In this document: positions 20,501 through 63,040 of the stretch, in pieces | How positions within the stretch are numbered: position 1 is the stretch's first letter | Layout of the letters: each line of letters starts with the position of its first letter | Assembly (NCBI RefSeq): GCF_963921235.1 | Contig: NC_086123.1 | Location: 37,200,001-37,264,000 of the forward strand | DNA: 64,000 nt | Source: Mobula hypostoma | Taxonomy: Eukaryota | Direction: 5' to 3' | The notes under the pieces: model-generated | Told to the model about the DNA's origin: nothing | The model's database searches: none | The model's input: the letters and a program-made list of their open reading frames with translations, nothing else | Program-made: the position numbers and the translations under genes

Positions 20501-21283
20501 GAAACTACAAGATTTTCACCATCACTCCTGTTCACACCGAACTACGTTGGCTACTGAATAAGCAATATCTTCACTGTAATGTTCATGCCCCTCAGGGTCT
20601 CTGTAAGTGCTGTAATGTATCACAACTGTTCCCACTCTGGAAACTCAGAAGCAATTACCCTACTATTGGCAGCTGTTCCTTCAAGTGTCAAATACCCAAA
20701 TTCTACAGTGCCCACAACTTACTAACCTGTTTGTCTTTGGGATGTGGGAGGAAACCCACATGGTCACAGGGAGAACGTATAGACAGCAGTGGGAATTGAA
20801 CCCTGCTCGTTGGAGCTGTAAAGTCTTACACCAGCTGCTACACTACCAGCGATTGAGAAACCGGGTGAAAATCGGATTGTTGTGTTGGCTGTCTCGGGTG
20901 TGAGATGGAGCAACGGCTACTTGATTTTCAATGAATGAGGAAGGAAAATAGTGGATACGAAGGAATTCCACAGCTTGGGTCTCAAGGAAAGAACAAAGTG
21001 AAAAATATGGTTCAGACACAGCACATAAACACTCACTAGCTTTCACCCCACTCCCTCCCAATTCCGATTTGATGGAGAATCTTATATTTGTTTTTGTGTC
21101 GTATCTGTGTAAGAGAGGTTCACAGTCAAATTTGAAATGTTGTCACTGCTGGAATGTCGTGCTAGTCGCAGATGGCACAGCAAGATCCCACAAATTGCAA
21201 TACAATAATAATATCAGGATCGCCTATCAAAGTGGTCTTATTTGAAGTTTGAATGTTGGCCAGAACTTTGCTCTAGAATGTAG

Positions 21284-25211: not shown

Positions 25212-28200
25212 GTGAGTGTAACATTGTGCCCCAAGTAACAGTGATTTGCTTAGATCTGGTTTATTGTTGAATTCATTTTGGAAATGGGTAAAAGCTCCTG
25301 TATGTGCCAGACTCATCCCTCCTGTAGTGGGTTAAATTCCTTGTCATCATTTGGCTGAGATACACTCATAGAGGCAGGAGGAGGAGAGATAATAGGTCCT
25401 GACTGATGAGTTAACCAGTTATGAAGCCACACAGAATGGGAACAGGCTTGTCAGCACCTCAATTTGCTCTGACCATTAAGGTCCCAGTTTATACCAAATC
25501 CTAGTTTACTTTTCCATCATCCCCATCAATTCCCCTCTGATCTGACCATTCCTTCTACATGGCCATTTAAAGTGCACAATTAACCTAGCAAATCACTTCT
25601 TTGGGATATGGGGAGAGTCTAGAGAATGCGCAGAGTCCCCACCAGTCACGATTGAACCCAGGGCCCCTCCCTCCCTCCTTTTAAAGGCAATTGGAGATGA
25701 AAGATTAGCATTACAATATCTGTCACATGAATATTGAAACTTTGAAGCATGCAGTGAAAGACATCGTTTGCATCAAAAAAAAACATTCCGAGGATTACGC
25801 TGGAGACAGCTGCAAATGCAGCCCGTTATGTCTGGCACTAACATAGCATGTGCACAACACATGGACCCCAACTCCTGCGTTCTTTTTTTTGGAATGTGGG
25901 AGGAAACTAGAGCATCTGGAGGTCATGCCAGATCGCTCCAATTCTGAAAATAAATATAAAAAATAATCTTGAAAATAATTGTCAAGTCTTCATTTAACTT
26001 TCTAAAATGCAGTTTGTATAATTCCCTCTGACATGTAAATATTTGCAGCAGTTATTAAGACCAAGTCAAGTTGAGATTCTTGTCAGGTGCAGGTGCAATG
26101 AAAAACTAGTTTGCAGCAACACCACAGGCATGTAGATTGAGACAACATACATGAATCATACATACGTCATACAAGGTACTGAACTTCTGACCATTGTTCA
26201 TGAAGACTGATCCATAGACTAGCGTCCCTACATTGTGGTCCAAGGAACTTAAATTCAAGTAATCACATAAACCTGGAATTAAGTGCAAAGTAGTCTCGGT
26301 CACTGTAACACACACACATTACTGGAGGAACTCAGCAGGCCAGGCAGCATCTAGGGAATGCAATAAAGAGTTGACATTTCGGACTGAGACCTTACATTAG
26401 GAATAGTAATGGTAAAGCTGTTGTAAAAACCCTACTGGTTAGCTATTGTCTTTTAGGGAAAGAAATCTGCTACTCTTACCCCATCTGGCTAGTAGTTGAC
26501 TCTAAATTTACCAATGTGATTATCCCTTTACTGCCTCCTCAGTTCAGAGCACCTCAAGTGAGACAATAGCTTCCAGGATTGCCTGTGATGGCACTTTCCA
26601 TAAATGGATATATTACAGGTTCATTTGAATGCTCCTTAGCATAACAAGCAATGACCTTTATTTGCAGGCAAGCTTGTAAACACATCATTAGTTATGAAGA
26701 TGTGCAGAGAGGCAGATACCACAGAGCCCTCCTCCTTCCTTGGTTTCTGTGCACTGTGGAAGCTGGTAATATGGCCAGCTTCAGGAATTGCTTTAATTGA
26801 CTCCCTGGGCAGGAACCTTGCAGCCTAAGTAATGCTACAAAAATATTTGTGGAATTGTGTACCATTGAAATTTGTGAGTCTAACTGAATGGGCCTGGGTT
26901 CTGAGCCAGTGTGGTGGTGCAGTAGTTAGCACATCACCCCACCCCACAGAGCCAGCTTTCAGCGGTCGGTGTTCAATTCCCACTGCTGTCTGTGAGGAGT
27001 TTGTATGGTCTCCTCATGACCATGTGGGTTTCCTTCCACGTTCCAAAGACATGCGGCTAGAGCTGGTGAGTTATGAGCATACCATGTTGGTACTACAAAC
27101 ATGGCGGCACTTGTCAGCTGCCCAGCTCAATCTTTGCTGGTCTGATTTGATGCAAACAACGCATTTCACTGTTTGTTTTGATGTACATGTGACAAATAAA
27201 AAACATCTCTTTCTTTAATATTATCTGGATTTCCCAAAGCTCACTTGATGGAAATGCCAGAAGAGTAGTGTAAGTGGCTGCTTTACCATTCATATTGTAT
27301 TTCAGGGTGCGAACCTTGGACATTTCCATGTTAGTGCATGGTGTTTGGCTGTCTTTATCAGCCATTCAGCGGCGTTAGAAATGCAGAGTAATGATTTATT
27401 TATTTAGACATCAGCACGGTAACAGGAACTTCTGCATCATGCGTTGCCCAATTGCACCCATTAATTGCACTTGGAACATGGGAGGAAACCGGAGCACCCG
27501 GAGGAAACCCACGTGGTCACCGGGAGAACGTACAAACTCCTTACAGACGGTGGCAGGAATTGAACCCAGTCTCTGGTGCTGTGAAGGCGTTCCTAACCAC
27601 TACACTACCTTGCTTCCACTGAGGCAGGGGGTTGTGCATCAACGAGCCCAGCTTCCATTTACCAGTCTGGTCCATTACAAGTGATCTCAGGTGAGCAAAT
27701 CCTATCACATTCATCTGAAGATAATTAGCAGATCAGTGCCAACAGTCTTGCTCACAGGATGAAGGCTAGACAAAGGTTTGGAGCAATGGTTCCAGTGGGA
27801 ATTAGGTTGACACCATTGACGTTTGATGGAAAGTAAATAGTGTGAACTTACCTTACCCAGCACAGTGCATGTCATTGAAAGAAGGAGACAGCTTTAGAGA
27901 TCTCATCAGGTTCAGAAGATTGGTGTTCAATTAACACTGATTATAACAACAAGACTAGTCTCTGATTCATGGGTGAGCAAGATTCAAGATTCAAGATGTT
28001 TAATATCATTTCCAGCACACAAGTGTAAAGGAGAACAAAATAATTGTTACTCTGCATCCGATGCAGCATAAAAAAAACTTACTGCAGATCCACAGTAGCA
28101 CAAAAAACACAAAGAGATAATGAACACAATAATAAACAACACAATAAATATAAATACATAAGATATCTGATAAACACAGATTGATTGTATATCCATAAAG

Positions 28201-34200: not shown

Positions 34201-36651
34201 CTTCTCCACACAAAAGTTGGTGCATATTGTAATGAGCTGCCAGAAATAATGGCTGAGGTGGCCATCTTGAAAAGCCATCTAGATATGTCCGTGGAAAGGA
34301 GAGTTTTAGAGGGCTACGGACCAAGTGTGGGCAGATGGTTCTAAACTGCTGGGCAACACTGTTGGCACTGACGCGTTGGGCGAAGTGCCTGCTTCCATGG
34401 TGTAATCCTCTATGACTCTGAAACTGCAGGTGATTATGAGACAAATCATGTGAAGGCCTGCAGAGGGTAAGGATTGAGTATAGGAGCCAGGATGTCTTCC
34501 TGTGACAGGACCAAGGGATGGTGCCAGGGAAGAGAGTCAGCAGAGTAACCGGCAAGTGGAAGGACGTCTGATCTCTGCTGGTGGCACGGCCGTGAGGTGG
34601 TTAGTGTAATATTTCACAGCGCTAGCTGTAAGATCAGGGTTCGATTCCCACTGTGGTCTGGAATGTCTGTATGTTCTCCCTGTGAAACCATAGAAACCAT
34701 AGAAACTACAGCACAGAAACAGGCCTTTTGGCCCTTCTTGGCTGTGCCAAACCATTTTCTGCCTAGTCCCACTGACCTGCACACGGACCATATCCCTCCA
34801 TACACCTCCCATCCATGTATCTGTCCAACTTATTCTTAAATGTTAAAAAAGATCCCGCATTTACCACTTCGTCTGGCAGCTCATACCATACTCCCACCAC
34901 TCTCTGTGTGAAAAAGCCCCCCCTAATGTTCCCTTTAAACTTTTCCCCCGTCACCCTAAACCCATGTCCTCTGGTTTTTTTCTCCCCTTGCCTCAGTGGA
35001 AAAAGCCTGCTTGCATTCACTCTATCTATACCCATCATAATTTTATATACCTCTATCAAATCTCCCCTCATTCTTCTACGCTCCAGGGAATAAAGTCCCA
35101 ACCTATTCAACCTTTCTCTGTAACTGAGTTTCTCAAGTCCTGGCAACATCCTTGTAAACCTTCTCTGCACTCTTTCAACCGTATTAATATCCTTCCTGTA
35201 ATTTGGTGACCAAAACTGAATACAATACTCCAGATTCGGCCTCACCAATGCCTTATACAACCTCATCATAACATTTCAGGTCTTATACTCAATACTTTGA
35301 TTTATAAAGGCCAATGTACCAAAAGCTCTCTTTACGACTCTATCTACCTGTGACGCCACTTTTAGGGAATTTTGTATCTGTATTCCCAGATCCCTCTGTT
35401 CCACTGCACTCCTCAGTGCCTTACCATTAACCCTGTATGTTCTACGTTGGTTTGTCCTTCCAACATGCAATACCTCACACTTGTCAGTATTAAACTCCAT
35501 CTGCCATTTTTTAGCCCATTTTTCCAGCTGGTCCAAGTCCCTTTGCAGGCTCTGAAAACCTTCCTCACTGTCTACTACATCTCCAATCTTTGTATCATCA
35601 GCAAACTTGCTGATCCAATTTACCACATTATCATCCAGATCATTGATATAGATGACAAATAACAATGGACCCAGCACTGATCTCTATGGCACACCACTAG
35701 TCACAGGCCTCCACTCAGAGAAGCAATTCTCTACCACCACTCTCTGGCTTCTTCCATCGAGCCAACGTCCAATCCAATTTACCACCTCTCCATGTATACC
35801 TAGCGACTGAATTTTCCTAACTAACCTCCCATGCGGGACCTTGTCAAAGGCCTTACTGAAGTCCATGTAGACAATATCCACTGCCTTCCCTTCATCCACT
35901 TTCCTGGTAACCTCCTCGAAAAACTCCAATAGATTGGTCAAACATGACCTACCACGCACAAAGCCATGTTGACTCTCCCTAATAAGCCCCTGTCTATCCA
36001 AATGCTTGTAGATTCTGTCTCTTAGTACTCCCTCCAATAACTGACCTACTACTGACGTTAAACTCACCGGCCTATAATTTCCCGGATTACTTTTCGATCC
36101 TTTTTTAAACAACGGAACAACATGAGCCACTCTCCAATCCTCTGGCACCTCACCTGTAGACAGCGACATTTTAAATATTTCTGCCAGGGCCCCTGCAATT
36201 TCAACACTAGTCTCCTTCAAGGTCCAAGGGAACAAGGTCCGAGGGAAAACGTGATCTTCCTCTGAGTGCTCAGATTTTCTCCCACATTGCAAAGATGTAC
36301 GAGTTAGTGTTGGTAAATTGTCAGCATGTGGGTGCTGGAAGACAGGTGACCATAATGGGCTGTCTCCAGCACATGCCCAGACTGTATTGGTTATTGATGC
36401 AAATGACACATTTCATTGTATGTTTTCTGTGACAAATCAAATGAATATTAAACCTTATCTTTTCCTCCCGCTGCTGCAGATGGGTCGGATACCAGTACCC
36501 TGGATACAGAGGATACCAGTACCTGTTTGAGATGGGGGATTACAAGCACTGGAATGAATGGTACGCCCAGCAGCCCATGATCCAGTCCATCCGCCGTCTC
36601 CGAGACATGCAATGGCATCAGAAGGGCTTCTTCCAGCTGGCCACCAAGTGA
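25095..36651 (+). CDS. CRYBB1: Beta-crystallin B1, spliced CDS join(25095-25211, 28452-28570, 30788-30920, 33592-33734, 36480-36651), 227 aa
   Basis: Five GT-AG exons with compatible phases (117+119+133+143+172 = 684 nt). Motifs [42 protein letters not shown] and RRLRDMQWH are betaB1-type. Divergent linkage to CRYBA4. Confidence 0.93.
26910..27215 (+). mobile_element. tRNA-derived V-SINE-like element (representative uninterrupted copy)
   Basis: B-box-like gttcaattccc, V-domain core gagtttgtatg...gggtttcc...ttccaaagac and a gtacatgtgacaaataaa tail. Other copies near 18125, 27395, 31100, 33150, 34580, 50490 and 56725. Confidence 0.75.
28452..28570 (+). CDS. CRYBB1: CRYBB1 exon 3
   Basis: ttgcag|[40 protein letters not shown]|gtaagt. 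Confidence 0.95.
28965..29360 (-). mobile_element. Interspersed element with an RTE/BovB-like 3' end
   Basis: ggcaaaacacttctg...ttgccaag tail on minus. Paralogs at about 15430-15610, 20220-20470 and 63120-63300. Confidence 0.55.
29537..29606. mobile_element. Short hAT-like MITE fragment
   Basis: Ends CAGGGGTTCCCAACC ... GGTTAGGAACGCCTG. Related copies near 14310-14375, 18285 and 31835. Confidence 0.45.
30788..30920 (+). CDS. CRYBB1: CRYBB1 exon 4
   Basis: ttccag|[44 protein letters not shown]|gtacgt. Confidence 0.95.
32383..32802 (+). mobile_element. Old CR1 3' fragment
   Basis: CR1 3' region with a gggccgaa...(TTCTATG) tail. Confidence 0.65.
33592..33734 (+). CDS. CRYBB1: CRYBB1 exon 5
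   Basis: tcacag|[48 protein letters not shown]|gtgagt. Confidence 0.95.
34684..36248 (-). mobile_element. Young CR1 LINE (RT region with two disruptions) inserted into a V-SINE in CRYBB1 intron 5
   Basis: [24 protein letters not shown] and KFADDTK motifs; (CATAGAAAC) tail; SINE halves at 34580-34683 and 36249-36445. Confidence 0.92.
36480..36651 (+). CDS. CRYBB1: CRYBB1 last exon
   Basis: ctgcag|[56 protein letters not shown] then TGA. Confidence 0.95.
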
Positions 36652-36809: not shown

Positions 36810-37419
36810 AAAGGTGGAGGAAACATTGGCAGCTTGGTCTGGTTCATAGGATGGGTCAGCATTTGGCGCATTTCCCTGCAGGGGTGGAATTTGTCCTCAG
36901 GACCTATGACAGAGTGGAGCTATAGGGATGTAGATACCTGAAGCTCTGGATCTGAAAGACGGCCCTGTCCATTTAATAGAACTGCTTTCAGAAACAGATT
37001 TCAATGTGCAGAAGCTAAGTATTGTGATTTTGGCATGAAGGCTCAAGGAAGTACTGTTGTGCTCTCCTGTTGGGACAGTGATCCGTGAAATCAGTGGTTC
37101 TCTGTACCTTCATCCACCATACATGACATGGAGGGTGTGGTTGCTCATTACCCACTATGTTTGGCAATGGGGTCTGGATACTGGGAACAATATGGAGTCT
37201 AGGAGATTCTGCACGCTGGTCTCGACTGATATCATGGGTGCTGTCACTAGACGCTGGACCCTATGGATAATATAGGCAGTGGACAGTGGGCACTGGACAC
37301 TTCTGGACATTATGGAGAGTGGACAATATAGATACTCTTGGTGGGTATTGGACACTGTGGACATTGTAGTACCTTAGATACTGGACATGATGGTATTAAT
37401 CACACAGAACACTATGGCC

Positions 37420-38600
37420 ACTGGATACAATGGACACTGAGCTCTATGGACACTGGACACTATGGTATCAATGACACTGGACTCTATGGACACTGGACAC
37501 TATGGTATCAATGACACTGGACCCTATGGTTACTGGACACTGTGGACAATGGACCCTAGGGACACTGTACACTAAGGAATCAATGACACCAGACTCTATG
37601 GACACTGGACACTACAGTATCAATGACACTAGACATTATGGACACTGGACACTGTGAACACTGGTCCCTATGGACACTGGACACTATGGTATCAATGACA
37701 CTGGACTCTATGGACACTGGACACTATGGTATCAATGACACTGGACTCTATGGACACTGGACACTATGGTATCAATGACACTGGACCCTATGGTTACTGG
37801 ACACTGTGGACAATGGACCCTAGGGACACTGTACACTAAGGAATCAATGACACCAGACTCTATGGACACTGGACACTACAGTATCAATGACACTAGACAT
37901 TATGGACACTGGACACTGTGAACACTGGTCCCTATGGACACTGGACCCTATGGTATCAATGACACTGGACTCTATGGACACTGGACACTATGGTATCAAT
38001 GTCACTGGACCCTATGGTTACTGGACACTGTGGACACTGGACCCTAGGGACACTGTACACTAAGGAATCAATGACACCAGACTCTATGGACACTATGGTA
38101 TCAATGACACTGGACCCTATGGTTACTGGACACTGGACCCTAGGGACACTGGATACTACAGTATCAATGACACTATACATTATGGACAAATTGGCACTGT
38201 GACACTGTCCCTAGGGACACTGGACACTACAGTATCAATGACACTAGACATTATGGACACTGGACACTGTGACACTGTCCCTAGGGACACTGGACATTAT
38301 GGTATCAATGACACTGGACATTGTGGACACTGGACACTATGGACATTGGTCCCTAGGGACACTGGACACTATGGTATCAATGACACTGGACCCTATGGTT
38401 ACTGGGCACTGGACCCTAGGGACACTGGACACTATGGTATCAATGACACTGGACATTGTGGACACTGGACACTATGGACATTGGTCCCTAGGGACACTGG
38501 ACACTATGGTATCAATGACACTGGACCCTATGGTTACTGGGCACTGGACCCTAGGGACACTGGACACTATGGTATCACTGACACTGGACACGATGGAGTC
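37420..38600 (+). repeat. Complex tandem array built on GGACACT (40-bp unit; higher-order periods of about 264/224 and 135 bp)
   Basis: GGACACTGGACACTATGGTATCAATGACACTGGACTCTAT repeats; degenerate flanks at about 37170-37420 and 38600-38800. Confidence 0.93.
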
Positions 38601-41600
38601 CGTGGATCAGGGACACTATGGACAATAGACACTATGAATACTGCACATTATGAATATTGGACACTAGATATCATAGATTGCGACTATGCGTAGTGGACAC
38701 AAAAATCACTGGACACTATAAACACTGGACACTGTGGACACAAACACTATGGTACTGGATTCAGAGGACACTATGGATAGTGTACACCATGGACATTGAA
38801 ACTAGTGGTCCTTAAGCCACCCAATGCACAAACTGTGGACCTCCCCACCCTAGATATTGGGCTGCAATATTGGGAGGCTCTTGCACCCAGTCACTGTTGG
38901 CGACCAGAGATGAACTATGGGCAGTGATGGGGCATCTGACCGCCCGAGCATGACTTGGGACCTCTCCCCACACACGTTCCTCACTGGAGAGAGTTAGTGG
39001 GTCTGGCCAATGATCCGGATCCAATCCTGATCTCCAGTGCTGTCTGTCTGGTCTACCTGTGATTGCATGGGGTTACTCCCATGTTCCAATGATGTGTGGG
39101 TTGGAGGTTAATTTGTCACTGTGAATTGTCCTGCATGAGCAGGAGAGCGGTAGAATTTAGGGAGGAGCAAATGAGAATGAAAGCAGAATAAAAGTGGTGT
39201 TTATGTTGGATTAATGAAAAGGGTTCAGCACAGACTCAATGGACCAAAGGGCCTGTTACTCTATTGTATCTTTCCATGACTCTATGACCACCCAGAACAA
39301 AGCAGCCCATCCTCCACCTTAATGATTCCCTCCATCCGGAGTAGTTGTAGTCCATACCATCTATCTGTTGGCACCTCCCGACCTACCATCTCTACCACCA
39401 AAAGCAGCAGGAGAGTGGGAACACCACTGGCTGCACATTCCTCCCCAAGCATCATTCTAACAAAGAAAATATTCCTCCATTGTCACTGGTTCTACATCCC
39501 CAAACTCCCTTACCAACTCTGCTCCTCCATTGTCACTGGGTCCATATTCCCAAACTCCCTTCCCAACTCTGCCGTGGGAGCACTTTCACCAGGAGGACTG
39601 CAGTTGTTCAAGAAAGTGGCTCGTAGTCACTTCTCAAGGACAATTAGGAAATAAATGCTGGGTTTGCTGGCTACCTCTATTGAAAAGCGAATGAAGAGAA
39701 GAGCTGCCACATTCTCGAAGGAAGTCTCTCGGTGGAGAGACGGAACACAGCAGGTGTGTGGCTGTGGCCCTGCCTGGTGTCTTTGTGACTGCCTCAGCAA
39801 CCAGTTCACATGACAACGCTGTGAACAGAGCTGTGACTACTGGGAGGCAGCTGGTAGGGGAGGGTGCATGGCTGGGGGAGGTACCCACAACAATCATTCC
39901 AGAAGGATCCTGCTTTGTGAATCACCCACTGCAGAACTGAAGTCAGCGAGGATCTCCGTTCACCAGATTAGCTGCTGCCGTGCATGACCCTTTCACAGCT
40001 GAAGCTCAAAGCTCTCCAGCTTCCCTCCACAGGGTAGGAACGTGGAATCAGATTGTTTGCGTGTGACAGTACAAAGCAGATGATAGCTGTACACAGCTGT
40101 GTTACACAGTTCCCTCCTGACTTGTGTTTCTGCTGAAGTCACAATCGGGTAAGATATAAAACCTGGCAGTGGATTTTGCTGTTGCCTGGTTGATTCTGTC
40201 ATGCCCGAGGTTACATTGTTTTCAAGGTGATCAAAGAACATCGAACAGTACGGTATGAGCCCTTTGTCCCATGATGTTGAGTTAACCTTTTGACCTATTC
40301 TACAATCAACCTAATGCTTCCCTCCTACACATCCCATAACCCTTCCTTTTCCTATCATCCACGTGCCTATCTAAGAATCTTTCAATTGTCCCTAATGGAT
40401 CAGCATGTTCGGCAGTGCATTCCAGGCACACTCCACCCTCTGTACAAGCAACTGCCTCTGACAGTTCCCTTAAACCTTCGTCCACTCACATTAAATGGAT
40501 GGTCTTTGGTATTAGCACTGCAGCCCTGGGAAAGTCTCTGACTGTTCGCTCTATCTACGCCTCTTATCACCCACTACCAAGTTATCTCTCATCCCTCACC
40601 CAGGCGACCCAGCCAGGGCTGATCAGTAGAAAAGTCAACCTTTCCTCAAGAAGTCAATATTGCGAATTTGTTTATAATATTAGATAAACGTTTATGCCTT
40701 AGGATCTGACAAATGACAAAATGTAAACCTGAAACATGAGAAAATCTGAAGGAGGAGAAATAAATGCTTACCTGATCTTGTTTGAAAGGGAAATGTTGTC
40801 CAGATCACAGGAGTAGTTCCAAGGTTCACCACAGAGCTTTACACATCCAAAGACAAACACCTGTTGCACTGTAATTCATTTGTGTTTTGTACCGTTCACC
40901 AGATAATATGGACAAGGCTCAGACTGTGGCTCCCACAAGGAGCACTGTACTCTCAGCTAGAACGAGTCTACAATTTACTTGCAACACCAGCACCGTAGCA
41001 TTCTATACTTCATTGTGTTTCACCAAGTTACACACTGAGATATCAGAGCAATTGACTAAAAAGTTAGTTGGATGATTAATTGATGGTTCAAGGATTGGGG
41101 ACACAAAATTTGGTACAGAAAATTATGAGGCGTATAGACAAGATGAATACTTGTAGCCTTTTTATCCTCAGTTTGGGTGAGACTAGAACTAGAGGTCATT
41201 GGTTCAGGGTGAAAGGTGATATTTAAGGGGATGGACTTTCAAATGCAGCATTTAAGAGAAGTTTGGATAAGTACATGGATGAGAGATGTATGGTTGGCTA
41301 TGGTCGGTGCAGATTGATGGGACGAGGCAGAAGACAAGGCCAGCACACGCTAGATGGACTGAAAGGCCTTCTCTGTGCTGTATCACTCTATGACTCTAAA
41401 TTCAAAATCTGGAGCAAAACATATAAGGTGGTGTGAGGGAAGAAGTTTTTACTCAGTGTTGTTCTGCTCTGAAACTCACCGCAAGGATGTAATGCTAAAC
41501 AACACACATAAAATGGTGGGGGAACTCGGCAGGCTAGACGGCATCTATGAAAAAGAATAAACAGTCAACGTTTTAGGCCAAGACCCTCCAGCGTCTGCAG

Positions 41601-49720: not shown

Positions 49721-51560
49721 GGAATAAGGATCTTATGCTTCGTTAACACACATTAAGGTGTTGGATTCATATTTCACAATAGACTGCAACTAGGAATTTT
49801 CTCGACTTGATCAGAATTTGGGTAACGTAAAAAAACTATTCCATGGCCTTTGGGCTGAAACTCCAGCCGGCCAAGTCATTTAGAACCATGTCCAGTCAGA
49901 AATGCTGATGAAGTGACATCTTCTGGAGGTGCTCTGCTCTCCAGGCAATTTGATTTACTCCATATGATACCAAGAAAAGGCTAAGAGTGCTAGATACTGA
50001 AAGATTATGGGACCAGGCAGAAGTCCTGACTATGTGGAAAATTGCTGTGTTATGTTCTGCCCACAAGAAAAAGGCAAATCCAACCCAGCTAATCGCTACT
50101 GAATGGGACTATTCTTAAACGTCAGTCTTGTTTCTATGAGCCGAAGGGCTTTAGGGAGGTGGGGAAAGGGCCCTTACGGAGCTGGGCTCCAAATCAACTG
50201 GGAGTTCACTCTGTGGCAAAAACGGATCCCTGAGGTCTGATGGCTGCCTCCTGTGGCAACATGCCTGGAATCCTTGCTCAGTCAGTGGTGTTAGTATTGG
50301 AGAGACACACAACAGAGTTGTAGAGCTTGAAAACAGGCTATTCGGCCCATCACACCCAAGATGCCTTGTTGAACTAGTTCCATTTGCCAGCTTTTGGCCT
50401 ATATTCCCACTAAAATTTCCTATCTGTGAACCTGTCTAAATACTGTTCTGATGGTAGTTGGTTATTGTCGATACTTGCTTACAAAGTCAGTAGGGCAACC
50501 CAGTAGCATTTTGATTACAGAATGTTGTACTGTACCAGCGACCTGGGTTCAATTCCTGCTGCTGCCTATAAGGAGTTCGCATGTTCTCCCCGTGACTGCG
50601 CGGGTTTCCTCCGGATGCTCCGGTTTCCTCCCACAGTCCAAAGACGTAGGTTAATTGGTCATTGTGGTTAGGCTAGGGTTAAGTTGGTGGGTTGCTGGGC
50701 AGTGTAGCTCAATGTGCCGGAAGAGCCTGTGCCTCCCTGTACATCAATAATAAGAAATAAAATGCACACAATTTCACAGAGCATCAGTCGATCACCGCAG
50801 CACAGGACAGCCATTTCAGCCACCATGTTGTGCTGACCTTTTAACCCACTCTGAGATCAACCTAACTCTTCCCTTCCACATAACTCTCCATTTTACTTAT
50901 TTTCAGAAATAAAAATGGATCAGTTAACCCTGGGCTGCTGGTGATTAACGCCAGGCTGCTGGTGATTGACTAACAGTGAGTCTGAGATTGGCCTAGGGTC
51001 TCTTTGCTTTCTTCAGCCCTCGTCCCCTACACTGCGTCTCCTTTTTCACAAGCTCTGGTCAGTAGTCCAGACTGTAACCGTCATTGGATGCCCAAACCTG
51101 CAACCAAATAGGGTATTTATAGCAATGAGCATTGCCTAGTCAGCTGTTGACTGCTTTATCACACTTGTGTATGTGTCTGTCTGCCATTCAGTCCTTATCA
51201 CATTTCTCCTGCTCCGTGTGCATAGCCTCCCTGCTGACTGGGATCTGGTAGTGGCTGTTTTTCCAAAAAAACTTCCAAGCTCTTTACGATACAGTCAACA
51301 AAGGTGTGAGCGTCTTTCTCTAGAAGGTACGTTACAAGTTGTGGTGGGGCAAGCGTTCCATTGATCAGGAATTTAGCACATTCTTCCCCATTTCTTCCCC
51401 TCCTTCTCCTTGGTGTTCATCTGCAGGCAGCCTGGGAGAGGGGTTATTTTTAGTGACTGTAGGGGCAGCTGTTACCTTGGTCTTTGGCCTCTTTGCCTGA
51501 GCCCTCGCTGGGACTCTGAAGCTGAACACCACAGCAAACATCAGTGTGGAAACATTTCCG

Positions 51561-52730: not shown

Positions 52731-52945
52731 TGAAGGGCCTGTACTGTACTGTTCAATGGGCTGAAAGGCCTGTACTGTACTGTTCAATGGGCTGAAGGGC
52801 CTTTACTGTACTGTTCAATGGGCTGAAGGGCCTGTACTTTACTGTTTCATGGGCTGAAGGGCCTTTACTGTAGTGTTCAATGGGCTGAAGGGCCTGTACT
52901 GTACTGTTCAATGGGCTGAAGGGCCTGTACTTTACTGTTCAATGG
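52731..52945 (+). repeat. Minisatellite, 31 bp x ~7 (GAAGGGCCTGTACTGTACTGTTCAATGGGCT), derived from a CR1-type 3' tail
   Basis: Unit starts from 52732 to 52918 in 31-bp steps; preceded by CR1 3'UTR-like sequence. Confidence 0.92.
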
Positions 52946-55640: not shown

Positions 55641-56439
55641 TCTGACTGCACTGCTGAAATTGTTTCATCTGTCCCTAAGCACAGCAGAGAAGGTCACCTG
55701 CTGCCCCATTTTATGTATGGGTGGTAAAATAAGGCGGGGGGTGTGAATTGACAGGAATGTGAGGAGAAAAGTATCAGTTAGGGTAGAATTGAGTAGCAAT
55801 GGAAGCATGATGGTTAGAACGGTGATCATGGGCCGAATGGCCTGTTTCTGTGCTAAATCTCTTTATACTCCATACTTCATGATGTTACAAAGTGATTTGC
55901 AATCAGATTCCTGTGACAGAAATTTGCAAGAAATGCACCAGCCAATTTCTGCACAGTGATCCCTCGCCCACAAACAATGAGATAATGGTCAGGGTCACCA
56001 TTTTGAGTTGTTGGCTGAGAGAGAAATGATGGCCAGGAGAAGGGAGAAGCCCTCTGTTTCTGGGTAATCTGCTCGGCTGGTGGAGTGTGTGAAGTGATAG
56101 GATGCTATGTAAATACAGGCTTTGGTAGCACACTGCAGAAGCTGAGACCTGTCTGTGTGCTGGCACTGACAAAGTTTGTCACTGAGGCTAAATATATTAC
56201 GGACACCCTTGGTGACCCGATTGCTTGATAAACAATGTGGCTTGTTATGAGAGGGACCTGATCCATTTATACCCCTGCATGGATTTCACAGCCACAGTTA
56301 GTTTACAATCAAAGCGGCAGGGCCAGGTGCCTGTGGCTATGAAGCTTAAGGTCTGCATAAAAGGCAAGGAAAGGGCATATACTGTAGCAAAAGTGAGTGG
56401 GAAGTTGAATGATTGGGAAGTTTTTAAAATCCAACAAAA

Positions 56440-56585
56440 GACTCTGTGTCCACCCCCTTCTCAGACAGTGTTCTGTTTAAATGGGATGACAGTCTCTGTC
56501 TCCACTCCCTTCTTAGTGTGCTCTGTTTAAATGGGGTGAGACTCTCTGTGTCCATCCCCTTCTCTGTGTGTTCTGTTTAAATGCA
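56440..56585 (+). repeat. Degenerate ~50-bp x3 tandem repeat (…gtgttctgtttaaatg)
   Basis: Three ctgtttaaatg-ending units. Confidence 0.7.
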
Positions 56586-56870
56586 GCCCAATTAGCAGAG
56601 AAAGGCTTTTTTCTACATCATGTATGGCGATTGTGACCCCACTCGGAAGCTGCTCACACATTTAGGTGCAGGAGAACGCTCCACAGCCTCCTGAGCAAGT
56701 GTTATGCACTCATATACAATTATGTGGCCGTGTGGCGATTAGCATAATGCTTTACAGTGCCAGTGGTCAAACTTCAATTCACATCACTGTCTGTAAGGAG
56801 TTTGTATGTTTTCCTTGTGACTGTGAGAGTTTTCTCCGTGTGCTCTGATTTCCTCCCACATTCAGAAGAC

Positions 56871-59800
56871 GTCCAGGTTAGGGTTAGTGAGTTGTATGCA
56901 CGCTACGTTGGTGTCCGGGTTAGGGTTAGTGAGTTGTATGCACGCTACGTTGGTGTCAATGTTAGAGTTAGTGAGTTGTATGCACGCTACGTTGGTGTCC
57001 AGGTTAAGGTTAGTGAGTTGTATGCATGCTACGTTGGTGTCCAGGTTCAGGTTAGTGAGTTGTATGCACACTACGTTGGTGTCCGGGTTAGGGTTAGTGA
57101 GTTGTATGCAGGCTACGTTGGTGTCCAGGTTAGGGTTAGTGAGTTGTATGCACGTTACGTTGGAGTCCAGGTTTGGGTTAGTGAGTTGTATGCACACTAC
57201 GTTGGTGTCCAGGTTAGGGTTAGTGAGTTGTATGCACGCTACGTTGGTGTCCAGGTTAGGGTTAGTGAGTTGTATGCACGCTACGTTGGTGTCCGGGTTA
57301 GGGTTAGTGAGTTGTATGCACGCTACGTTGGTGTCCGGGTTAGGGTTAGTGAGTTGTATGCACGCTACGTTGGTGTGCGGGTTAGGATTAATGAGTTGTA
57401 TGCACGCTACGTTGGTGTCCGGGTTAGGGTTAGTGAGTTGTATGCAAGCTACATTGGTGTCCAGGTTAGGGTTAGTGAGTTGTATGCACGCTACGTTGGT
57501 GTCAATGTTAGGGTTAGTGAGTTGTATGCACGCTACGTTGGTGTCCGAGTTAGGGTTAGTGAGTTGTATGCACGCTACGTTGGTGTCCAGGTTAGGATTA
57601 GTGAGTTGTATGCACGCAACGTTGGTGTCCAGGTTAGGGTTAGTGAGTTGTATGCACGCTACGTTGGTGTCCGGGTTAGGGTTAGTGAGTTGTATGCAAG
57701 CTACATTGGTGTCCAGGTTAAGGTTAGTGAGTTGTATGCACGCTACGTTGGTGTCCAGGTTAGGGTTAGTGAGTTGTATGCACGCTACGTTGGTGTCCAG
57801 GTTAGGGTTAGTGAGTTGTATGCAGGCTACGTTGGTGTCCAGGTTAGGGTTAGTGAGTTGTATGCACGCTACGTTGGTGTCAATGTTAGGGTTAGTGAGT
57901 TGTATGCACGCTACGTTGGTGTCCGAGTTAGGGTTAGTGAGTTGTATGCACGCTACATTGGTGTCCAGGTTAGGATTAGTGAGTTGTATGCACGCAACGT
58001 TGGTGTCCAGGTTAGGGTTAGTGAGTTGTATGCACGCTATGTTGCTGTCCAGGTTAGGGTTAGTGAGTTGTATGCATGCTACGTTGGTGCCCATGTAAGG
58101 GTTAGTGAGTTGTATGCACGCTACGTTGGTGTCCATGTAAGGGTTAGTGAGTTGTATGCACGCTACGTTGGTGTCCAGGTTAGGGTTAGTGAGTTGTATG
58201 CACGCTACGTTGGTGTCCGGGTTAGGGTTAGTGAGTTGTATGCACGCTACGTTGGTGTCCGGGTTAGGGTTAGTGAGTTGTATGCATGCTACGTTGGTGT
58301 CCGGGTTAGGGTTAGTGAGTTGTATGCACGCTACGTTGGTGTCCAGGTTAGGATTAGTGAGTTGTATGCACGCTACGTTGGTATCCGGGTTAGGATTAGT
58401 GAGTTGTATGCATGCTACGTTGGTGTCCGGGTTAGGGTTAGTGAGTTGTATGCACGCTACGTTGGTGTCCGGGTTAGGGTTAGTGAGTTGTATGCACGCT
58501 ACGTTGGTGTCCGGGTTAGGGTTAGTGAGTTGTATGCACGCTACGTTGGTGTCCGGGTTAGGATTAGTGAGTTGTATGCACGCTACGTTGGTGTCCGGGT
58601 TAGGATTAGTGAGTTGTATGCACGCTACGTTGGTGTCCGGGTTAGGGTTAGTGAGTTGTATGCACGCTACGTTGGTGTCCAGGTTAAGGTTAGTGAGTTG
58701 TTTGCACGCTACATTGGTGTCCAGGTTAAGGTTAGTGAGTTGTTTGCACGCTACGTTGGTGTCCGAGTTAGGGTTAGTGAGTTGTATGCACGCTACGTTG
58801 GTGTCCATGTTAGGGTTAGTGAATTGTATGCATGTTACGTTGGTGACCAGGTTAGGATTAGTGAGTTGTATGCACGCTACGTTGGTGTCCGGGTTAGGGT
58901 TAGTGAGTTGTATGCACACTACATTGGTGTCAATGTTAGGGTTAGTGAGTTGTATGCATGCTACGTTGGTGTCCAGGTTAGGGTTAGTGAGTTGTATGCA
59001 CGCTACGTTGGTGTCAATGTTAGGATTAGTGAGTTGTATGCATGCTACTTTGGTGTCCAGGTTAGGGTTAGTGAGTTGTATGCACGCTACGTTGGTGTCC
59101 GGGTTAGTGTTAGTGAGTTGTATGCACACTACGTTGGTGTCAATGTTAGGGTTAGTGAGTTGTATGCACGCTACGTTGGTGTCCGGGTTAGGATTAGTGA
59201 GTTGTATGCACGCTACGTTGGTGTCCGGGTTAGGGTTAGTGAGTTGTATGCACGCTACGTTGGTGTCAATGTTAGGGTTAGTGAGTTGTATGCACGCTAC
59301 GTTGGTATCCAGGTTAGGGTTAGTGAGTTGTATGCACGCTATGTTGGTGTCCGGGTTAGGGTTAGTGAGTTGTATGCACGCTACGTTGGTGTCCGGGTTA
59401 GGGTTAGTGAGTTGTATGCACGCTACGTTGGTGTCCAGGTTAGGATTAGTGAGTTGTATGCATGCTACGTTGGTGTAAAGGTTAGGGTTAGTGAGTTGTA
59501 TGCACGCTACGTTGGTGTCCGGGTTAGGGTTAGTGAGTTGTATGCACGCTACGTTGGTGTCCAGGTTAGGGTTAGTGAGTTGTATGCACACTACGTTGGT
59601 GTCTGGGTTAAGGTTAGTGAGTTGTATGCACGCTACGTTGGTGTCCAGGTTAAGGTTAGTGAGTTGTATGCACGCTACGTTGGTGTCCGGGTTAGGGTTA
59701 GTGAGTTGTATGCACGCTACGTTGCTGTCCAGGTTAGGGTTAGTGAGTTGTATGCACGCTACATTGGTGTCCAGGTTAAGGTTAGTGAGTTGTATGCACG

Positions 59801-60047
59801 CTACGTTGGTGTCCAGGTTAAGGTTAGTGAGTTGTATGCATGCTACGTTGGTGTCCAGGTTCAGGTTAGTGAGTTGTATGCACACTACGTTGGTGTCCGG
59901 GTTAGGGTTAGTGAGTTGTATGCAGGCTACGTTGGTGTCCAGGTTAGGGTTAGTGAGTTGTATGCACGTTACGTTGGAGTCCAGGTTTGGGTTAGTGAGT
60001 TGTATGCACACTACGTTGGTGTCCAGGTTAGGGTTAGTGAGTTGTAT
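56871..60047 (+). repeat. 42-bp satellite, block 1 (~76 units; GTCCAGGTTAGGGTTAGTGAGTTGTATGCACGCTACGTTGGT)
   Basis: Strict 42-bp period with no apparent indels. Confidence 0.98.
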
Positions 60048-60860
60048 TGTTATGTACCCCGTAACTGGGTTGCCAAACCAGCAGAAATCGACCACTTAGT
60101 TGGAGTCTGGTTTAACAGAAACTAATGAAGTTTTATTAAAGAAACAAATTACACAGTACTCCAATCGCAAGGATATAAATGCAACAGGTTAGCAATGATA
60201 AAACACACATGTAAACAGAACTAGGGTAATAGGAATCAACCAAGCTCTATCGCAGTCTAGGGGTAAAATGATCAGTCTCAAGTGACGCAGAGTTCGGTTC
60301 AGCTTAGTACAGTTCGCAATAATCGCTGCTGTGCCATTGGAGAGAAAGAGAGAGAATGCAAATTTTGATTCAAACAGACCCTTGATGTTCTTCGCAGTTA
60401 GCTTTTGGGCGAACCCCTTTATGTCTTCTGTGGTCACCGACTGTGACCCCTCCGTTCCGGATACAACCGTTCTTCCACGGTGAACCCGGCACCCAGGCAA
60501 GGGCGGACACACACACCAGGTTCCCGCCAATCGTACCTTTTCACCCTGTGCATCTATGGTCGGTTTCCGCGACCAGATTTCCAAACTGCCACCAAATTTT
60601 GGGTGCACACCGCTCTTTCAGGGTCTCGTTATCACATGATCTCGTGGTGTGTGTTGTGCCTTAGCGAACCTGTTCTTTTTCTCCCCCTGCTGGGGTATCG
60701 TCTGTCCATCAAACTTCAAACAGTTCAGGTTCAAAGCAATCGATCTGTCTTTCTCGTTAATCTCTCTCTTCTCTCTTATTAGCATTTTGTATGTTTCTCC
60801 ATTGTCTCCCTCATCTCTCTCATCAGCATCAATCTTCTGATAATTTGGTTTTTTTTCACA
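60048..60860 (-). mobile_element. Solo LTR inserted in the satellite
   Basis: TGT...ACA termini; exact 4-bp TSD GTAT (60044-60047 and 60861-60864). AATAAA on minus near 60132 suggests the orientation. Confidence 0.85.
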
Positions 60861-62150
60861 GTATGCACGCTACGTTGGTGTCCAGGTTAGGGTTAGTGAG
60901 TTGTATGCACGCTACATTGGTGTCCGGGTTATGGTTAGTGAGTTGTATGCATGCTACGTTGGTGTCCGGGTTAGGGTTAGTGAGTTGTATGCACGCTACG
61001 TTGGTGTCCGGGTTAGGGTTAGCGAGTTGTATGCATGCTACGTTGGTGTCTGGGTTAGGGTTAGTGAGTTGTATGCACGTTACGTTGGTGTCCGGGTTAA
61101 GGTTAGTGAGTTGTATGCACGCTACGTTGGTGTCCAGGTTCAGGTTAGTGAGTTGTATGCACGCTACGTTGGTGTCCGGCTTAGGATTAGTGAGTTGTAT
61201 GCACGCTACGTTGGTGTCCGGGTTAGGGTTAGTGAGTTGTATGCACGCTACGTTGGTGTCCAGGTTAAGGTTAGTGAGTTGTATGTACGCTACGTTGGTA
61301 TCCGGGTTAGGATTAGTGAGTTGTATGCACGCTACGTTGGTGTCCGGGTTAGGGTTAGTGAGCTGTATGCACGCTACGTTGGTATCCGGGTTAGGGTTAG
61401 TGAGTTGTATGCACGCTACGTTGGTGTCAATGTTAGGGTTAGTGAGTTGTATGCACGCTACGTTGGTGTCCGGGTTAAGGTTAGTGAGTTGTATGTACGC
61501 TACGTTGGTATCCGGCTTAGGGTTAGTGAGTTGTATGCACACTACGTTGGTGTCCGGGTTAGGGTTAGTGAGTTGTATGCACGCTACGTTGGTATCCAGG
61601 TTAGGGTTAGTGAGTTGTATGCATGCTACGTTGGTGTCCAGGTTAGGGTTAGTGAGTTGTATGCACGCTACGTTGGTATCCGGGTTAGGGTTAGTGAGTT
61701 GTATGCACGCTACGTTGGTGTCCGGGTTAGGGTTAGTGAGTTGTATGCACGCTACGTTGGTGTCCAGGTTAGGGTTAGTGAGTTGTATGCACGCTACGTT
61801 GGTGTCCAGGTTAGGATTAGTGAGTTGTATGCACGCTACGTTGGTGTCCCGGTTAGGGTTAGTGAGTTGTATGCACGCTACGTTGGTGTCCAGGTTAGGG
61901 TTAGTGAGTTGTATGCACACTACGTTGGTATCCGGGTTAGGGTTAGTGAGTTGTATGCACGCTACGTTGGTATCCGGGTTAGGGTTAGTGAGTTGTATGC
62001 ACGCTACGTTGGTGCTGGAAGGGTTAGGGTTAGGGTTAGGGTTAGGGTTCGGGTTAGGGTTAGTGAGTTGTATGCACGCTACGTTGGTGCTGGAAGGGTT
62101 AGGGTTAGGGTTAGGGTTAGGGTTAGTGACTTGTATGCACGCTACATTGG
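60861..62150 (+). repeat. 42-bp satellite, block 2 (~30 units), ending with (TTAGGG)n tracts
   Basis: Same unit; telomeric tracts at 62021-62063 and 62096-62126. Confidence 0.97.
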
Positions 62151-62284
62151 TGCTGGAAACGTGGCAACACTTGCCAGTTGCCCCCAGTACTGCTTGGAAT
62201 CTGTTGGTCATTGATGTAAACAACGCATTTCACTGTATATTTCAATGTACATGTGACAAATAAATAATCTTTACTTTAAGGCAA

Positions 62285-63040
62285 GACCATAAGATATCAG
62301 AGCCGATTAAGGCCTTTCAGCCCATCAAGTCTGCTCTGCTATTCCATCATAGCTGATCCCGGATCCCACTCAACCCCTCACACCTGCCTTCTCACTATAT
62401 CCTTTGATGCCCTGGCCAATCAGGAAACTATCAACTTCTTTCTTAAATATTCCCACGGACTTGGCCTCCACTGCAGTCTGTGGCAGAGCATTCCACAGAT
62501 TTACTACTTTCTGGCTAAAAAAATTCCTCCTTCCTTCTGTTCTAAAGAGTCAGCCCTCAATTTTGAGGCTGTGCCCTGTAGTTCTGGACACCCCCACCAT
62601 AGGAAACATCCAAACATTCTCTCCATATCCACCCTATCTAGTCCTTTCAAAATTCAGTAGGTTTCAATGAGATCTCCATGCATTCTTCCAAATTCCAGTG
62701 AGTACAGGCCCAAAGCTGCCAAACGCTTCTCATATGTTAACCCCTTCATTCCCGCAATCATCCTCATAAACCTCCTCTGGACTCTCTCCAATGATAACAC
62801 ATCCTTTCTGAGACCTGGGACCCAAAACTGTTGTCAATACTCTGCAGCCTGATTAGTGTCTTATAAAGCCTCAGCATTATCTCCTTGCATTTATATTCTA
62901 TTCCCCTAGAAATAAATGCCTACATTGCATTTGCCTTCTTTGCCACAGACTTAACCTTCTAGGAATCTTGCATGAGGACTCCCAAGTTTCTCTGCACCTC
63001 TGATGTTTGAACCTTCCCCTCATTAAGATAATAGTCCAGC
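62285..63040 (-). mobile_element. Degraded CR1 LINE 3' region
   Basis: CR1 3' RT region and UTR, similar to 2617-3420. Confidence 0.8.

What the first reader, a model, noticed from the sequence alone, without database searches (positions are those of the whole stretch)
56725..62275. A ~300-bp SINE inflated to 5.5 kb: satellite birth inside a single V-SINE copy
Seen: the SINE 5' half runs straight into unit 1 (…cagaagac|gtccaggttaggg). The last unit runs into the SINE 3' half (…ggtgctggaaacgtggcaacac…gtacatgtgacaaataaa). The unit aligns to the single-copy segment at about 27050-27092 of the uninterrupted SINE. About 105 low-divergence units. A clean case with the source, both boundaries and the later history all readable.
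Basis: seen in the sequence. Interest (0 to 1): 0.72.

Follow-up and report, generated by a model that had tools for sequence, protein, structure and literature searches.

The report
Minisatellite grown inside one SINE copy
A 42-base piece from the middle of one old SINE copy in a ray genome has been copied head to tail about 105 times, swelling a 300-base element to 5.5 kb; it is a very clean example of an already known way that repeat arrays arise.

Summary
Window 56871-62013 carries 103 units of exactly 42 bp, in phase and without a single indel. Two longer terminal units follow (75 and 63 bp, 62014-62151). TRF's "124 copies" is inflated by an 813-bp insertion inside unit 76.

The array lies between the 5' part (56725-56870) and the 3' part (62152-62275) of one tRNA-type SINE. 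In six other SINE copies of the window the unit aligns to the same single-copy interior site. The array was therefore born in place from that copy.

Later events can be read:
- a solo-LTR-like insertion with a 4-bp target duplication (GTAT);
- an exact six-unit block duplication;
- TTAGGG runs of 5-7 repeats in the two last units.

A related organism (about 7% flank divergence) has a contig covering the SINE/unit-1/unit-2 junction, so the array predates that split.

New here: the array is the most CpG-dense stretch of the window (observed/expected about 1.0-1.2 against 0.31).

The mechanism is ordinary. SINE-derived tandem arrays of the same architecture are described in squamates, and TE-derived minisatellites are common in humans. 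This scan already noted SINE-, LTR- and LINE-born minisatellites elsewhere in this genome.

"Satellite" and "V-SINE" remain unproven labels. Verdict: real, a new member of a known kind, moderate-to-low interest.

The parts
56725..56870 (+). 5' part of the host SINE: decayed tRNA-like head plus the conserved central segment, ending ...CCCACATTCAGAAGAC
   Evidence: Aligns with the 5' parts of nine other SINE copies in the window. This stretch has a summed contig depth of about 1e5 in every run, so it belongs to a very abundant family.
56871..60047 (+). Units 1-75 and the first 27 bases of unit 76 of the 42-bp array
   Evidence: In-register cutting shows no indels; TRF.
60044..60047 (.). Left copy of the 4-bp target-site duplication GTAT of the insertion; the right copy is at 60861-60864
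   Evidence: Removing 60048-60864 restores an intact consensus unit 76, and units 77-103 stay in phase.
60048..60860 (-). 813-bp foreign insertion, solo-LTR-like: TG...CA ends, no terminal inverted repeat, no terminal poly(A). AATAAA lies 84 nt before the 3' end on the minus strand.
   Evidence: There is no other copy in the window. CpG o/e is 0.72, so it is younger than its surroundings. The 139-aa ORF inside it has no Pfam match.
60865..62013 (+). Last 15 bases of unit 76 and units 77-103
62014..62151 (+). Two long terminal units (75 bp at 62014-62088, 63 bp at 62089-62151). Each is GCTGGA (from the SINE 3' side) + (AGGGTT)5-7 + the 3' 27 bases of the unit. Telomere-like hexamer runs lie at 62020-62063 and 62095-62126.
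   Evidence: TRF rows with period 63 and period 6; sequence; core spacing of 75 and 63.
62152..62275 (+). 3' part of the host SINE: GCTGGAAACGTGGCAACACTTGC ... GTACATGTGACAAATAAA plus a short tail
   Evidence: Aligns with the 3' parts of five other copies.
26905..27200 (+). Uninterrupted reference copy of the same SINE family; its single-copy counterpart of the unit lies at 27055-27091

Best explanation
This is a locally born minisatellite. An old tRNA-type SINE copy of about 310 bp inserted here. A 42-bp segment of its interior, lying between ...CCAAAGAC and GCTGGAAG... of the family, was duplicated in tandem; this step is inferred to be a slippage or misaligned-repair event, and the breakpoints share only one base (G). 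The duplicate then grew to about 105 units by repeated unequal exchange and gene-conversion-type repair between misaligned units, which also scattered unit variants across the array.

Further events at the 3' edge used a different register and dragged in GCTGGA from the SINE 3' side. There the telomere-like hexamer already present in the unit (GGTTAGGGTTAG) expanded to 5-7 copies, most simply by microsatellite slippage. An LTR-type element later inserted into unit 76.

Shown here: the anatomy, the homology to the SINE interior, the order of the insertion relative to the array, and the array's presence in a related organism. Inferred: the molecular mechanisms of duplication and growth. No function is indicated. 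The array is most likely neutral DNA whose CpG density simply reflects 100-fold copying of a unit that carried three CpGs.
For: Anatomy:
- 103 units in perfect 42-bp phase plus two long units.
- The flanks align collinearly with the two halves of other SINE copies, and the unit fills the gap between them exactly once.
- The unit's best local alignment lies at the same interior site in 6 of 6 other copies, z 4.2-6.8 against shuffles.

Real mutational history rather than assembly error:
- 53 unit types; transitions to transversions 131:49.
- The three CpG sites are the most variable positions, with both TG and CA decay products.

Growth by copying of already-mutated units:
- The linked non-CpG pair C4A+G6T occurs in 9 units spread from unit 3 to unit 90.
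- Variants are almost randomly interspersed (adjacent-unit difference 2.77 against 2.88 when permuted).
- Units 4-9 are identical to units 71-76, a 252-bp block.

Insertion later than the array: a 4-bp duplication GTAT, and removal restores unit 76 and the phase.

Independent data:
- Contigs of organism A are identical to the flank.
- Organism B has an orthologous flank contig at 56516-56856 (23 differences and 2 gaps in 343).
- Organism B also has a contig at 56829-56942 (5 differences) that runs from the SINE 5' part through unit 1 and 30 bases into unit 2.
- Contigs spanning two or more units exist in organisms B and D.

Precedent: SINE-derived tandem arrays with SINE termini at their ends (PMC10702118); 23% of human mini/satellites derive from TEs (PMC3389668).
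Against: - No target-site duplication of the host SINE could be found, so 'one copy' rests on collinearity alone.
- The array length is not confirmed by long reads. Read laying cannot lay reads inside the array, and only the left boundary was laid.
- The best holder runs contain only 0.26-0.29 of the sampled words of 56300-62700, about what the non-array parts alone would give. The array's own words are therefore poorly represented in the short-read contigs.
- The founder unit kept three CpGs although the flanking SINE parts and all other copies are CpG-poor (o/e 0.12-0.57). A purely neutral late birth does not predict this well.
- Whether other loci carry the same unit is unknown.
Confidence: 0.88

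Rival explanations
1. Assembly artefact: the array is real but short, and the assembler inflated or mis-joined it. The 252-bp exact block repeat (units 4-9 = 71-76) could be a sign of that.
For: The array's exact words are under-represented in the short-read contig sets of the source species (share 0.26-0.29). There is one exact six-unit duplication that ends at the insertion. No long read was available.
Against: - The window has no N.
- 53 different unit types with a CpG-decay spectrum stay in perfect phase.
- The foreign insert has a clean 4-bp duplication inside a unit.
- Summed contig depth over the array bins is about 100-fold the unique depth in three organisms. This is a rough measure, but it fits about 100 units.
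- Tandem contigs exist in other organisms.
Confidence: 0.04
2. This is one locus of a dispersed SINE-derived satellite family (a true 'sSat'). The unit would have amplified and spread to many loci, or a SINE variant with internal repeats was itself retrotransposed, and this locus is not the birthplace.
For: In squamates SINE-derived satellites occur at many loci per genome (PMC10702118). Array-like contigs occur in four organisms. The rest of the genome could not be searched.
Against: - No other tandem copy of the unit lies in the 64-kb window.
- Summed depth of unit-like contigs is only about 130, 76 and 78 times the unique depth in organisms A, B and C (my arithmetic, rough), which one locus can explain.
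- Both SINE halves are present and collinear here.
- 5.5 kb is far beyond a Pol III SINE transcript.
Confidence: 0.05
3. Retained functional element: a CpG-island-like, G-skewed array that carries TTAGGGTTAG every 42 bp and is kept because proteins bind it (telomere-repeat-binding factors or CpG-binding factors). This does not conflict with the SINE origin.
For: - CpG o/e is 1.0-1.17 over 4.3 kb, against 0.31 in the rest of the window.
- 68 of 103 units keep TTAGGGTTAG.
- The array is present in organisms about 7-8% diverged in the flank.
Against: - The motif is lost in a third of the units, through G-to-A changes at unit positions 11 and 13 and other changes.
- CpG sites are decaying at the usual hot-spot rate: 10%, 25% and 56% of units have lost them, which fits ordinary methylated DNA of about the age of the A/B split.
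- An LTR-like insert is tolerated inside the array.
- The surroundings are dead LINE and SINE copies.
- No binding, methylation or expression data were available.
Confidence: 0.05

Closest known systems
SINE-derived satellites (sSats) of squamate reptiles (Vassetzky, Kosushkin and Ryskov 2023, PMC10702118)
   Same: Tandem arrays whose unit is a portion of a tRNA-related SINE. The terminal units are longer and run on into the SINE's own termini, and a minority of those loci have both SINE termini, as here. Arrays reach up to about 1000 units and are only partly homogenised.
   Different: A different host group (a ray) and a different SINE family. The unit here is 42 bp, much shorter than the units the paper's discussion compares with nucleosome-length satellites. 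Only one locus is known here, whereas sSats are multi-locus and tend to be subtelomeric. The authors state that such arrays had not been looked for outside squamates.
TE-derived minisatellites in the human genome (Ahmed and Liang 2012, PMC3389668)
   Same: A minisatellite initiated inside a transposable element and expanded by local duplication of units. That paper also notes that the proposed initiation mechanisms explain only a small share of cases.
   Different: This case keeps both halves of the parent element, has about 105 units, and has a dated later history: an insertion, a block duplication, and presence in a sister organism.
Classical G-rich hypervariable minisatellites (general knowledge, not tested against a reference here)
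   Same: The unit length falls in the 10-100 bp range. There is strong G-rich strand asymmetry (GC skew +0.43 to +0.45). Variant repeats are interspersed without higher-order periodicity.
   Different: Allele-length polymorphism and germ-line instability, the defining behaviour, could not be examined.
Short interstitial telomeric sequences (general knowledge)
   Same: Perfect (TTAGGG)5 runs lie inside the chromosome at 62020-62063 and 62095-62126.
   Different: Here they sit inside repeat units that already contained GGTTAGGGTTAG. Slippage from a pre-existing seed is therefore enough, and no telomerase-mediated break repair needs to be invoked.
Other TE-born minisatellites noted by this scan in the same genome (s1-142594 SINE head, s1-141961 LTR, s1-142002 Rex1 fragment)
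   Same: The same process in the same genome. One of them also comes from a SINE whose remainder is still attached (unchecked notes).
   Different: Different source segments and unit lengths (30, 33 bp and others). This one comes from the SINE body, keeps both SINE ends, and carries a telomere-like motif.

Membership tests
SINE-derived tandem array (sSat-type) | Head-to-tail repeats of one unit | tested here: met
   103 in-phase 42-bp units plus 2 long units.
SINE-derived tandem array (sSat-type) | The unit is homologous to part of a SINE | tested here: met
   Best local alignment falls at the same interior site in 6 of 6 other copies, z 4.2-6.8; MAFFT collinearity.
SINE-derived tandem array (sSat-type) | Terminal units continue into the SINE's own termini | tested here: met
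   The 5' part at 56725-56870 and the 3' part at 62152-62275 align to the family.
SINE-derived tandem array (sSat-type) | Satellite-like behaviour: many loci, high copy number, heterochromatic or subtelomeric position | not testable with these tools
   The genome cannot be searched. Rough contig depth suggests only about 100 unit equivalents. The chromosomal position is unknown.
V-SINE superfamily (HE1 of sharks and rays) | tRNA-derived head with A and B boxes | tested here: inconclusive
   Sister copies show TAGTGTAGTGG- and GGGTTCAATTCC-type box-like strings. ARAGORN and Rfam find no tRNA anywhere in the window, and the host copy's head is decayed.
V-SINE superfamily (HE1 of sharks and rays) | The strongly conserved central V segment | not testable with these tools
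   No V-domain or HE1 sequence is at hand: Ogiwara 2002 is not held and a text search for the motif found nothing. From memory, the segment GGAGTTTGTA..GGGTTTCCTCCGGGTGCTCCGGTTTCCTCCCAC..CCAAAGAC resembles the one shared by DANA and HE1. This is a lead only.
V-SINE superfamily (HE1 of sharks and rays) | 3' tail shared with a partner LINE (HER1) | not tested
   No partner LINE 3' end was compared.
Hypervariable minisatellite | Unit of 10-100 bp, G-rich strand bias, interspersed variant repeats | tested here: met
Hypervariable minisatellite | Length polymorphism between alleles or individuals | not testable with these tools
Solo LTR (the 813-bp insert) | TG...CA ends, a short target duplication, a poly(A) signal near one end, and other copies flanking an internal region elsewhere | tested here: inconclusive
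   TG..CA ends, a 4-bp duplication and AATAAA 84 nt from the minus-strand end are present. No second copy or full-length element was found in the window or in the scan's notes.

The most novel reading that the evidence does not exclude
The array may be kept rather than merely tolerated. In this reading it is a CpG-island-like, G-skewed block carrying a double-stranded telomere-repeat motif (TTAGGGTTAG) every 42 bp. It has persisted at about 100 units in several ray species and acts as an interstitial binding platform for telomere-repeat or CpG-binding proteins. The (TTAGGG)5-7 runs at its 3' edge would then be traces of telomerase acting at breaks seeded by the SINE-borne motif.
Probability: 0.05. 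Interest if true: 0.6.

Novelty: new member of a known kind. Interest (0 to 1): 0.3.

Why it matters
This is a textbook-quality single-locus record of how a minisatellite starts inside a mobile element. The parent copy, the exact 42-bp source segment, both junctions, a second set of breakpoints at the 3' edge, a dated later insertion and a sister-organism copy are all visible.

It extends SINE-derived tandem arrays, so far documented systematically only in squamates, to a cartilaginous fish and to another SINE family. Together with other notes of this scan, it suggests that this ray genome turns TE fragments into minisatellites unusually often.

It does not reveal a new mechanism or a function. 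The one feature worth following up is the CpG density of the array, which is about three times the local background.

Tried and rejected
Only the left boundary could be laid, so the right boundary, the insert junctions and the array length remain unverified by reads.
- ARAGORN found no tRNA. Rfam at gathering and at permissive thresholds found nothing meaningful.
- No target-site duplication of the host SINE or of reference copy A was found.
- Ogiwara et al. 2002 (V-SINE definition) is not held, and a literal motif search of the paper library returned nothing. V-SINE membership stays untested.
- Hairpin-driven slippage is rejected. Three units fold worse than shuffled controls on both strands (z +3.1 and +2.0), and the long units show nothing.
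- Higher-order repeat structure is rejected. No lag shows lowered divergence except the single six-unit block at lag 67.
- The >1000-aa 'ORFs' over the array are mechanical. The 42-bp unit is stop-free in three of six frames.
- A Pfam scan of ten neighbouring ORFs gave only reverse-transcriptase fragments, and nothing in the insert.
- The insert has no second copy in the window or in the scan's index.
- The bacterial genome and metagenome collections were not scanned, because they cannot hold a ray locus.
Full report
**What is there**

Tandem Repeats Finder reports a 42-bp array at 56871-62089. Its "124 copies, 81% matches" is misleading. Anchoring on the conserved core of the unit gives 105 cores. 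Of the spacings, 101 are exactly 42 bp, one is a gap of 859 bp, and the last two are 75 and 63 bp.

The 859-bp gap is an 813-bp foreign sequence (60048-60860) inside unit 76, flanked by a 4-bp duplication GTAT. After removing it and one GTAT, the region 56871-62013 cuts into 103 units of exactly 42 bp with no insertion or deletion anywhere.

The consensus unit is GTCCAGGTTAGGGTTAGTGAGTTGTATGCACGCTACGTTGGT. Position 5 is split, A in 55 units and G in 47. Units differ from the consensus by 1.75 bases on average (4.2%) and from each other by 6.8%. There are 53 unit types.

**The two ends**

On the left, the array starts directly after ...CCCACATTCAGAAGAC (56870). On the right, unit 103 is followed by two longer units, 62014-62088 (75 bp) and 62089-62151 (63 bp). 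Each of these begins with GCTGGA, continues with (AGGGTT)7 (one hexamer is CGGGTT) or (AGGGTT)5, and ends with the last 27 bases of the normal unit.

Then comes GCTGGAAACGTGGCAACACTTGC ... GTACATGTGACAAATAAA. GCTGGA is the first hexamer of the SINE's 3' part. The 3' edge of the array was therefore built by at least two further duplications in a different register. These dragged six bases of the flank along, and the telomere-like hexamer expanded within them.

**Source of the unit**

BLAST within the window finds about ten copies of the same SINE family:
- a full copy at 26905-27200;
- long copies at 18136-18471, 31110-31385, 36257-36447, 25717-25907 and 20675-20848;
- 5' parts at 27474-27605, 33240-33383 and 50513-50645.

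MAFFT aligns a composite of the host (5' part + one unit + 3' part) collinearly with them. The unit fills the stretch between the family's ...CCAAAGAC and GCTGGAAG..., which every other copy has once.

A local alignment of the unit against each of six copies puts the best match at that same site each time. Identity is 70-85%, and z is 4.2-6.8 against 300 shuffled units per copy.

The unit is thus homologous to the SINE interior, and the array lies in a single collinear copy of about 310 bp. No target-site duplication of that copy could be found. This is unsurprising for a copy only about 65-77% identical to its relatives.

**Family label**

ARAGORN and Rfam detect no tRNA. The tRNA-type head is visible only as box-like strings in sister copies.

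The literature lists HE1 of sharks and rays as a V-SINE with a tRNA head and a LINE-derived tail (PMC3747384). The defining paper is not held, and no reference sequence was available. "V-SINE" therefore remains a plausible label that I could not test.

**History readable in the array**

- *Mutation spectrum.* Substitutions are 131 transitions to 49 transversions. The three CpG sites of the unit (positions 4-5, 31-32 and 36-37) are the most variable, with both TG and CA products. This is the signature of ordinary germ-line decay, not of assembly noise.
- *Shared variants.* Non-CpG variants are shared by non-adjacent units. For example, the linked pair C4A+G6T occurs in nine units between unit 3 and unit 90. 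Units were therefore copied after they had mutated.
- *Mixing.* Variants are almost randomly interspersed. Adjacent units differ by 2.77 bases against 2.88 after permutation (p 0.11), and units within five positions of each other give p 0.02. There is no higher-order periodicity. The only long exact repeat is units 4-9 = 71-76, 252 bp.
- *Interpretation.* This pattern is what repeated unequal exchange and conversion-type repair produce in minisatellites. That step is an inference.
- *No hairpins.* The single strands do not form hairpins and fold worse than shuffles.
- *Strand bias.* The unit is strongly G-skewed, +0.43 to +0.45.

**The insertion**

The 813-bp insert begins with TG and ends with CA, and has no terminal inverted repeat and no terminal poly(A). 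AATAAA lies 84 nt from the end on the minus strand, and the target duplication is 4 bp. This fits a solo LTR in minus orientation.

No second copy was available to confirm that. Its CpG o/e of 0.72 against a background of 0.31 suggests a fairly recent arrival. It entered an already existing array, because its removal restores unit 76 and the phase.

**Independent data and age**

Public runs of five coded organisms hold parts of the locus. The left boundary (56200-57330) was laid on four runs.

- Organism A's contigs are identical to the unique flank, so it is the source species.
- Organism B has an orthologous contig over 56516-56856 with 23 differences and 2 gaps in 343 bases, about 7% divergence.
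- Organism B also has a 121-base contig over 56829-56942 with 5 differences. It runs from the SINE 5' part through unit 1 and 30 bases into unit 2. The tandem junction is therefore present at the orthologous locus. The 30 bases fall one short of the tool's 31-base bridging rule, but the unit-2 sequence is quite unlike the SINE 3' part.
- Contigs spanning two or more units also occur in B (57204-57303) and in D (57223-57308).
- Summed contig depth over the array bins, divided by the unique depth, is roughly 130, 76 and 78 in A, B and C. This is my arithmetic, and the tool warns that such depth is not a copy number. It is compatible with one array of about 100 units per genome and not with a high-copy satellite.

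The array therefore predates the A/B split. The 4% mean unit divergence is of the same order as the per-lineage divergence since that split.

**CpG density**

CpG observed/expected is 1.0 (56871-60047) and 1.17 (60865-62013). The rest of the window gives 0.31, and the other SINE copies give 0.12-0.57. These are the highest values in the window.

The simple explanation is that a unit carrying three CpGs was copied 100-fold more recently than the surrounding DNA has been decaying. The CpGs are being lost unit by unit, in 10%, 25% and 56% of units at the three sites.

One thing is not predicted by that explanation. The founder unit still had CG at positions 31-32 and 36-37, whereas the dispersed copies in the window and most family contigs read TG there. 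Chance, an older CG-bearing subfamily, or GC-biased conversion could each account for it. I cannot tell which.

**Surroundings**

The window is repeat-rich:
- reverse-transcriptase fragments in four of ten ORFs scanned;
- several other minisatellites;
- an interspersed repeat directly downstream at 62283 onward.

The very long ORFs across the array are mechanical, because the unit is stop-free in three frames. I did not establish whether the array is intronic.

**Comparison with what is known**

SINE-derived tandem arrays with exactly this architecture were described in 56 squamate genomes: units from a SINE portion, with longer terminal units running into the SINE termini. Their authors say they have not looked elsewhere (PMC10702118). 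In humans, at least 23% of minisatellites and satellites derive from TEs (PMC3389668). I found no report for cartilaginous fishes.

This scan has already noted a SINE-head-derived, an LTR-derived and a Rex1-derived minisatellite in other parts of this same genome (unchecked notes). The process is evidently frequent here.

**Verdict**

The object is a single-locus minisatellite rather than a demonstrated satellite, and a new member of a known kind. The telomere-motif and CpG-island readings are not excluded, but nothing positive supports them.

Noticed in passing
window 56871-62013: The array is the most CpG-dense stretch of the window. CpG observed/expected is 1.0-1.17 and GC is 48.5-49.6% over 4.3 kb, against 0.31 for the rest. 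It would pass or nearly pass common CpG-island criteria. The founder unit carries CG at two sites where the other SINE copies read TG.
   Followed up: partly
window 62020-62063 and 62095-62126: Perfect telomere-type (TTAGGG)n runs of 5-7 repeats lie inside the last two array units. They grew from the GGTTAGGGTTAG already present in the unit. 68 of 103 normal units keep TTAGGGTTAG.
   Followed up: partly
window 60048-60860: 813-bp solo-LTR-like insert (TG..CA ends, 4-bp duplication GTAT, AATAAA near the minus-strand end). It has no other copy in the window and a relatively high CpG o/e of 0.72.
   Followed up: partly
window 56346-56440: A 95-bp stretch just upstream belongs to an extremely abundant interspersed repeat. 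Summed contig depth is about 1e5 against a unique depth of about 9 in three organisms, comparable with the SINE itself.
   Followed up: no
window 56442-56583: A 50-bp tandem repeat of 2.8 copies lies 140 bp upstream of the SINE. The orthologous contig of organism B stops aligning at 56516, inside this repeat, so copy number may differ between species.
   Followed up: no
window 18281-18370 (minus-strand SINE copy 18136-18471): This SINE copy has an extra stretch of about 88 bp inserted at the same GGTTAGGG site that forms the start of the amplified unit. The extra stretch is flanked by GGTTAGGG and GGTTATGG.
   Followed up: no
window 10894-11200, 37380-38666, 52731-52945, 4393-4611: Four more minisatellites in the same 64 kb: 34 bp x 9, a complex 16/40/112-bp array of 1.2 kb, 31 bp x 7, and 70 bp x 3. 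The region, or the genome, is minisatellite-prone.
   Followed up: no
window 56757-60125 and 60791-62263: Mechanical ORFs of 1122 and 490 codons, and others on both strands, run across the array because the 42-bp unit (14 codons) lacks stops in three of six frames. They are not genes.
   Followed up: yes
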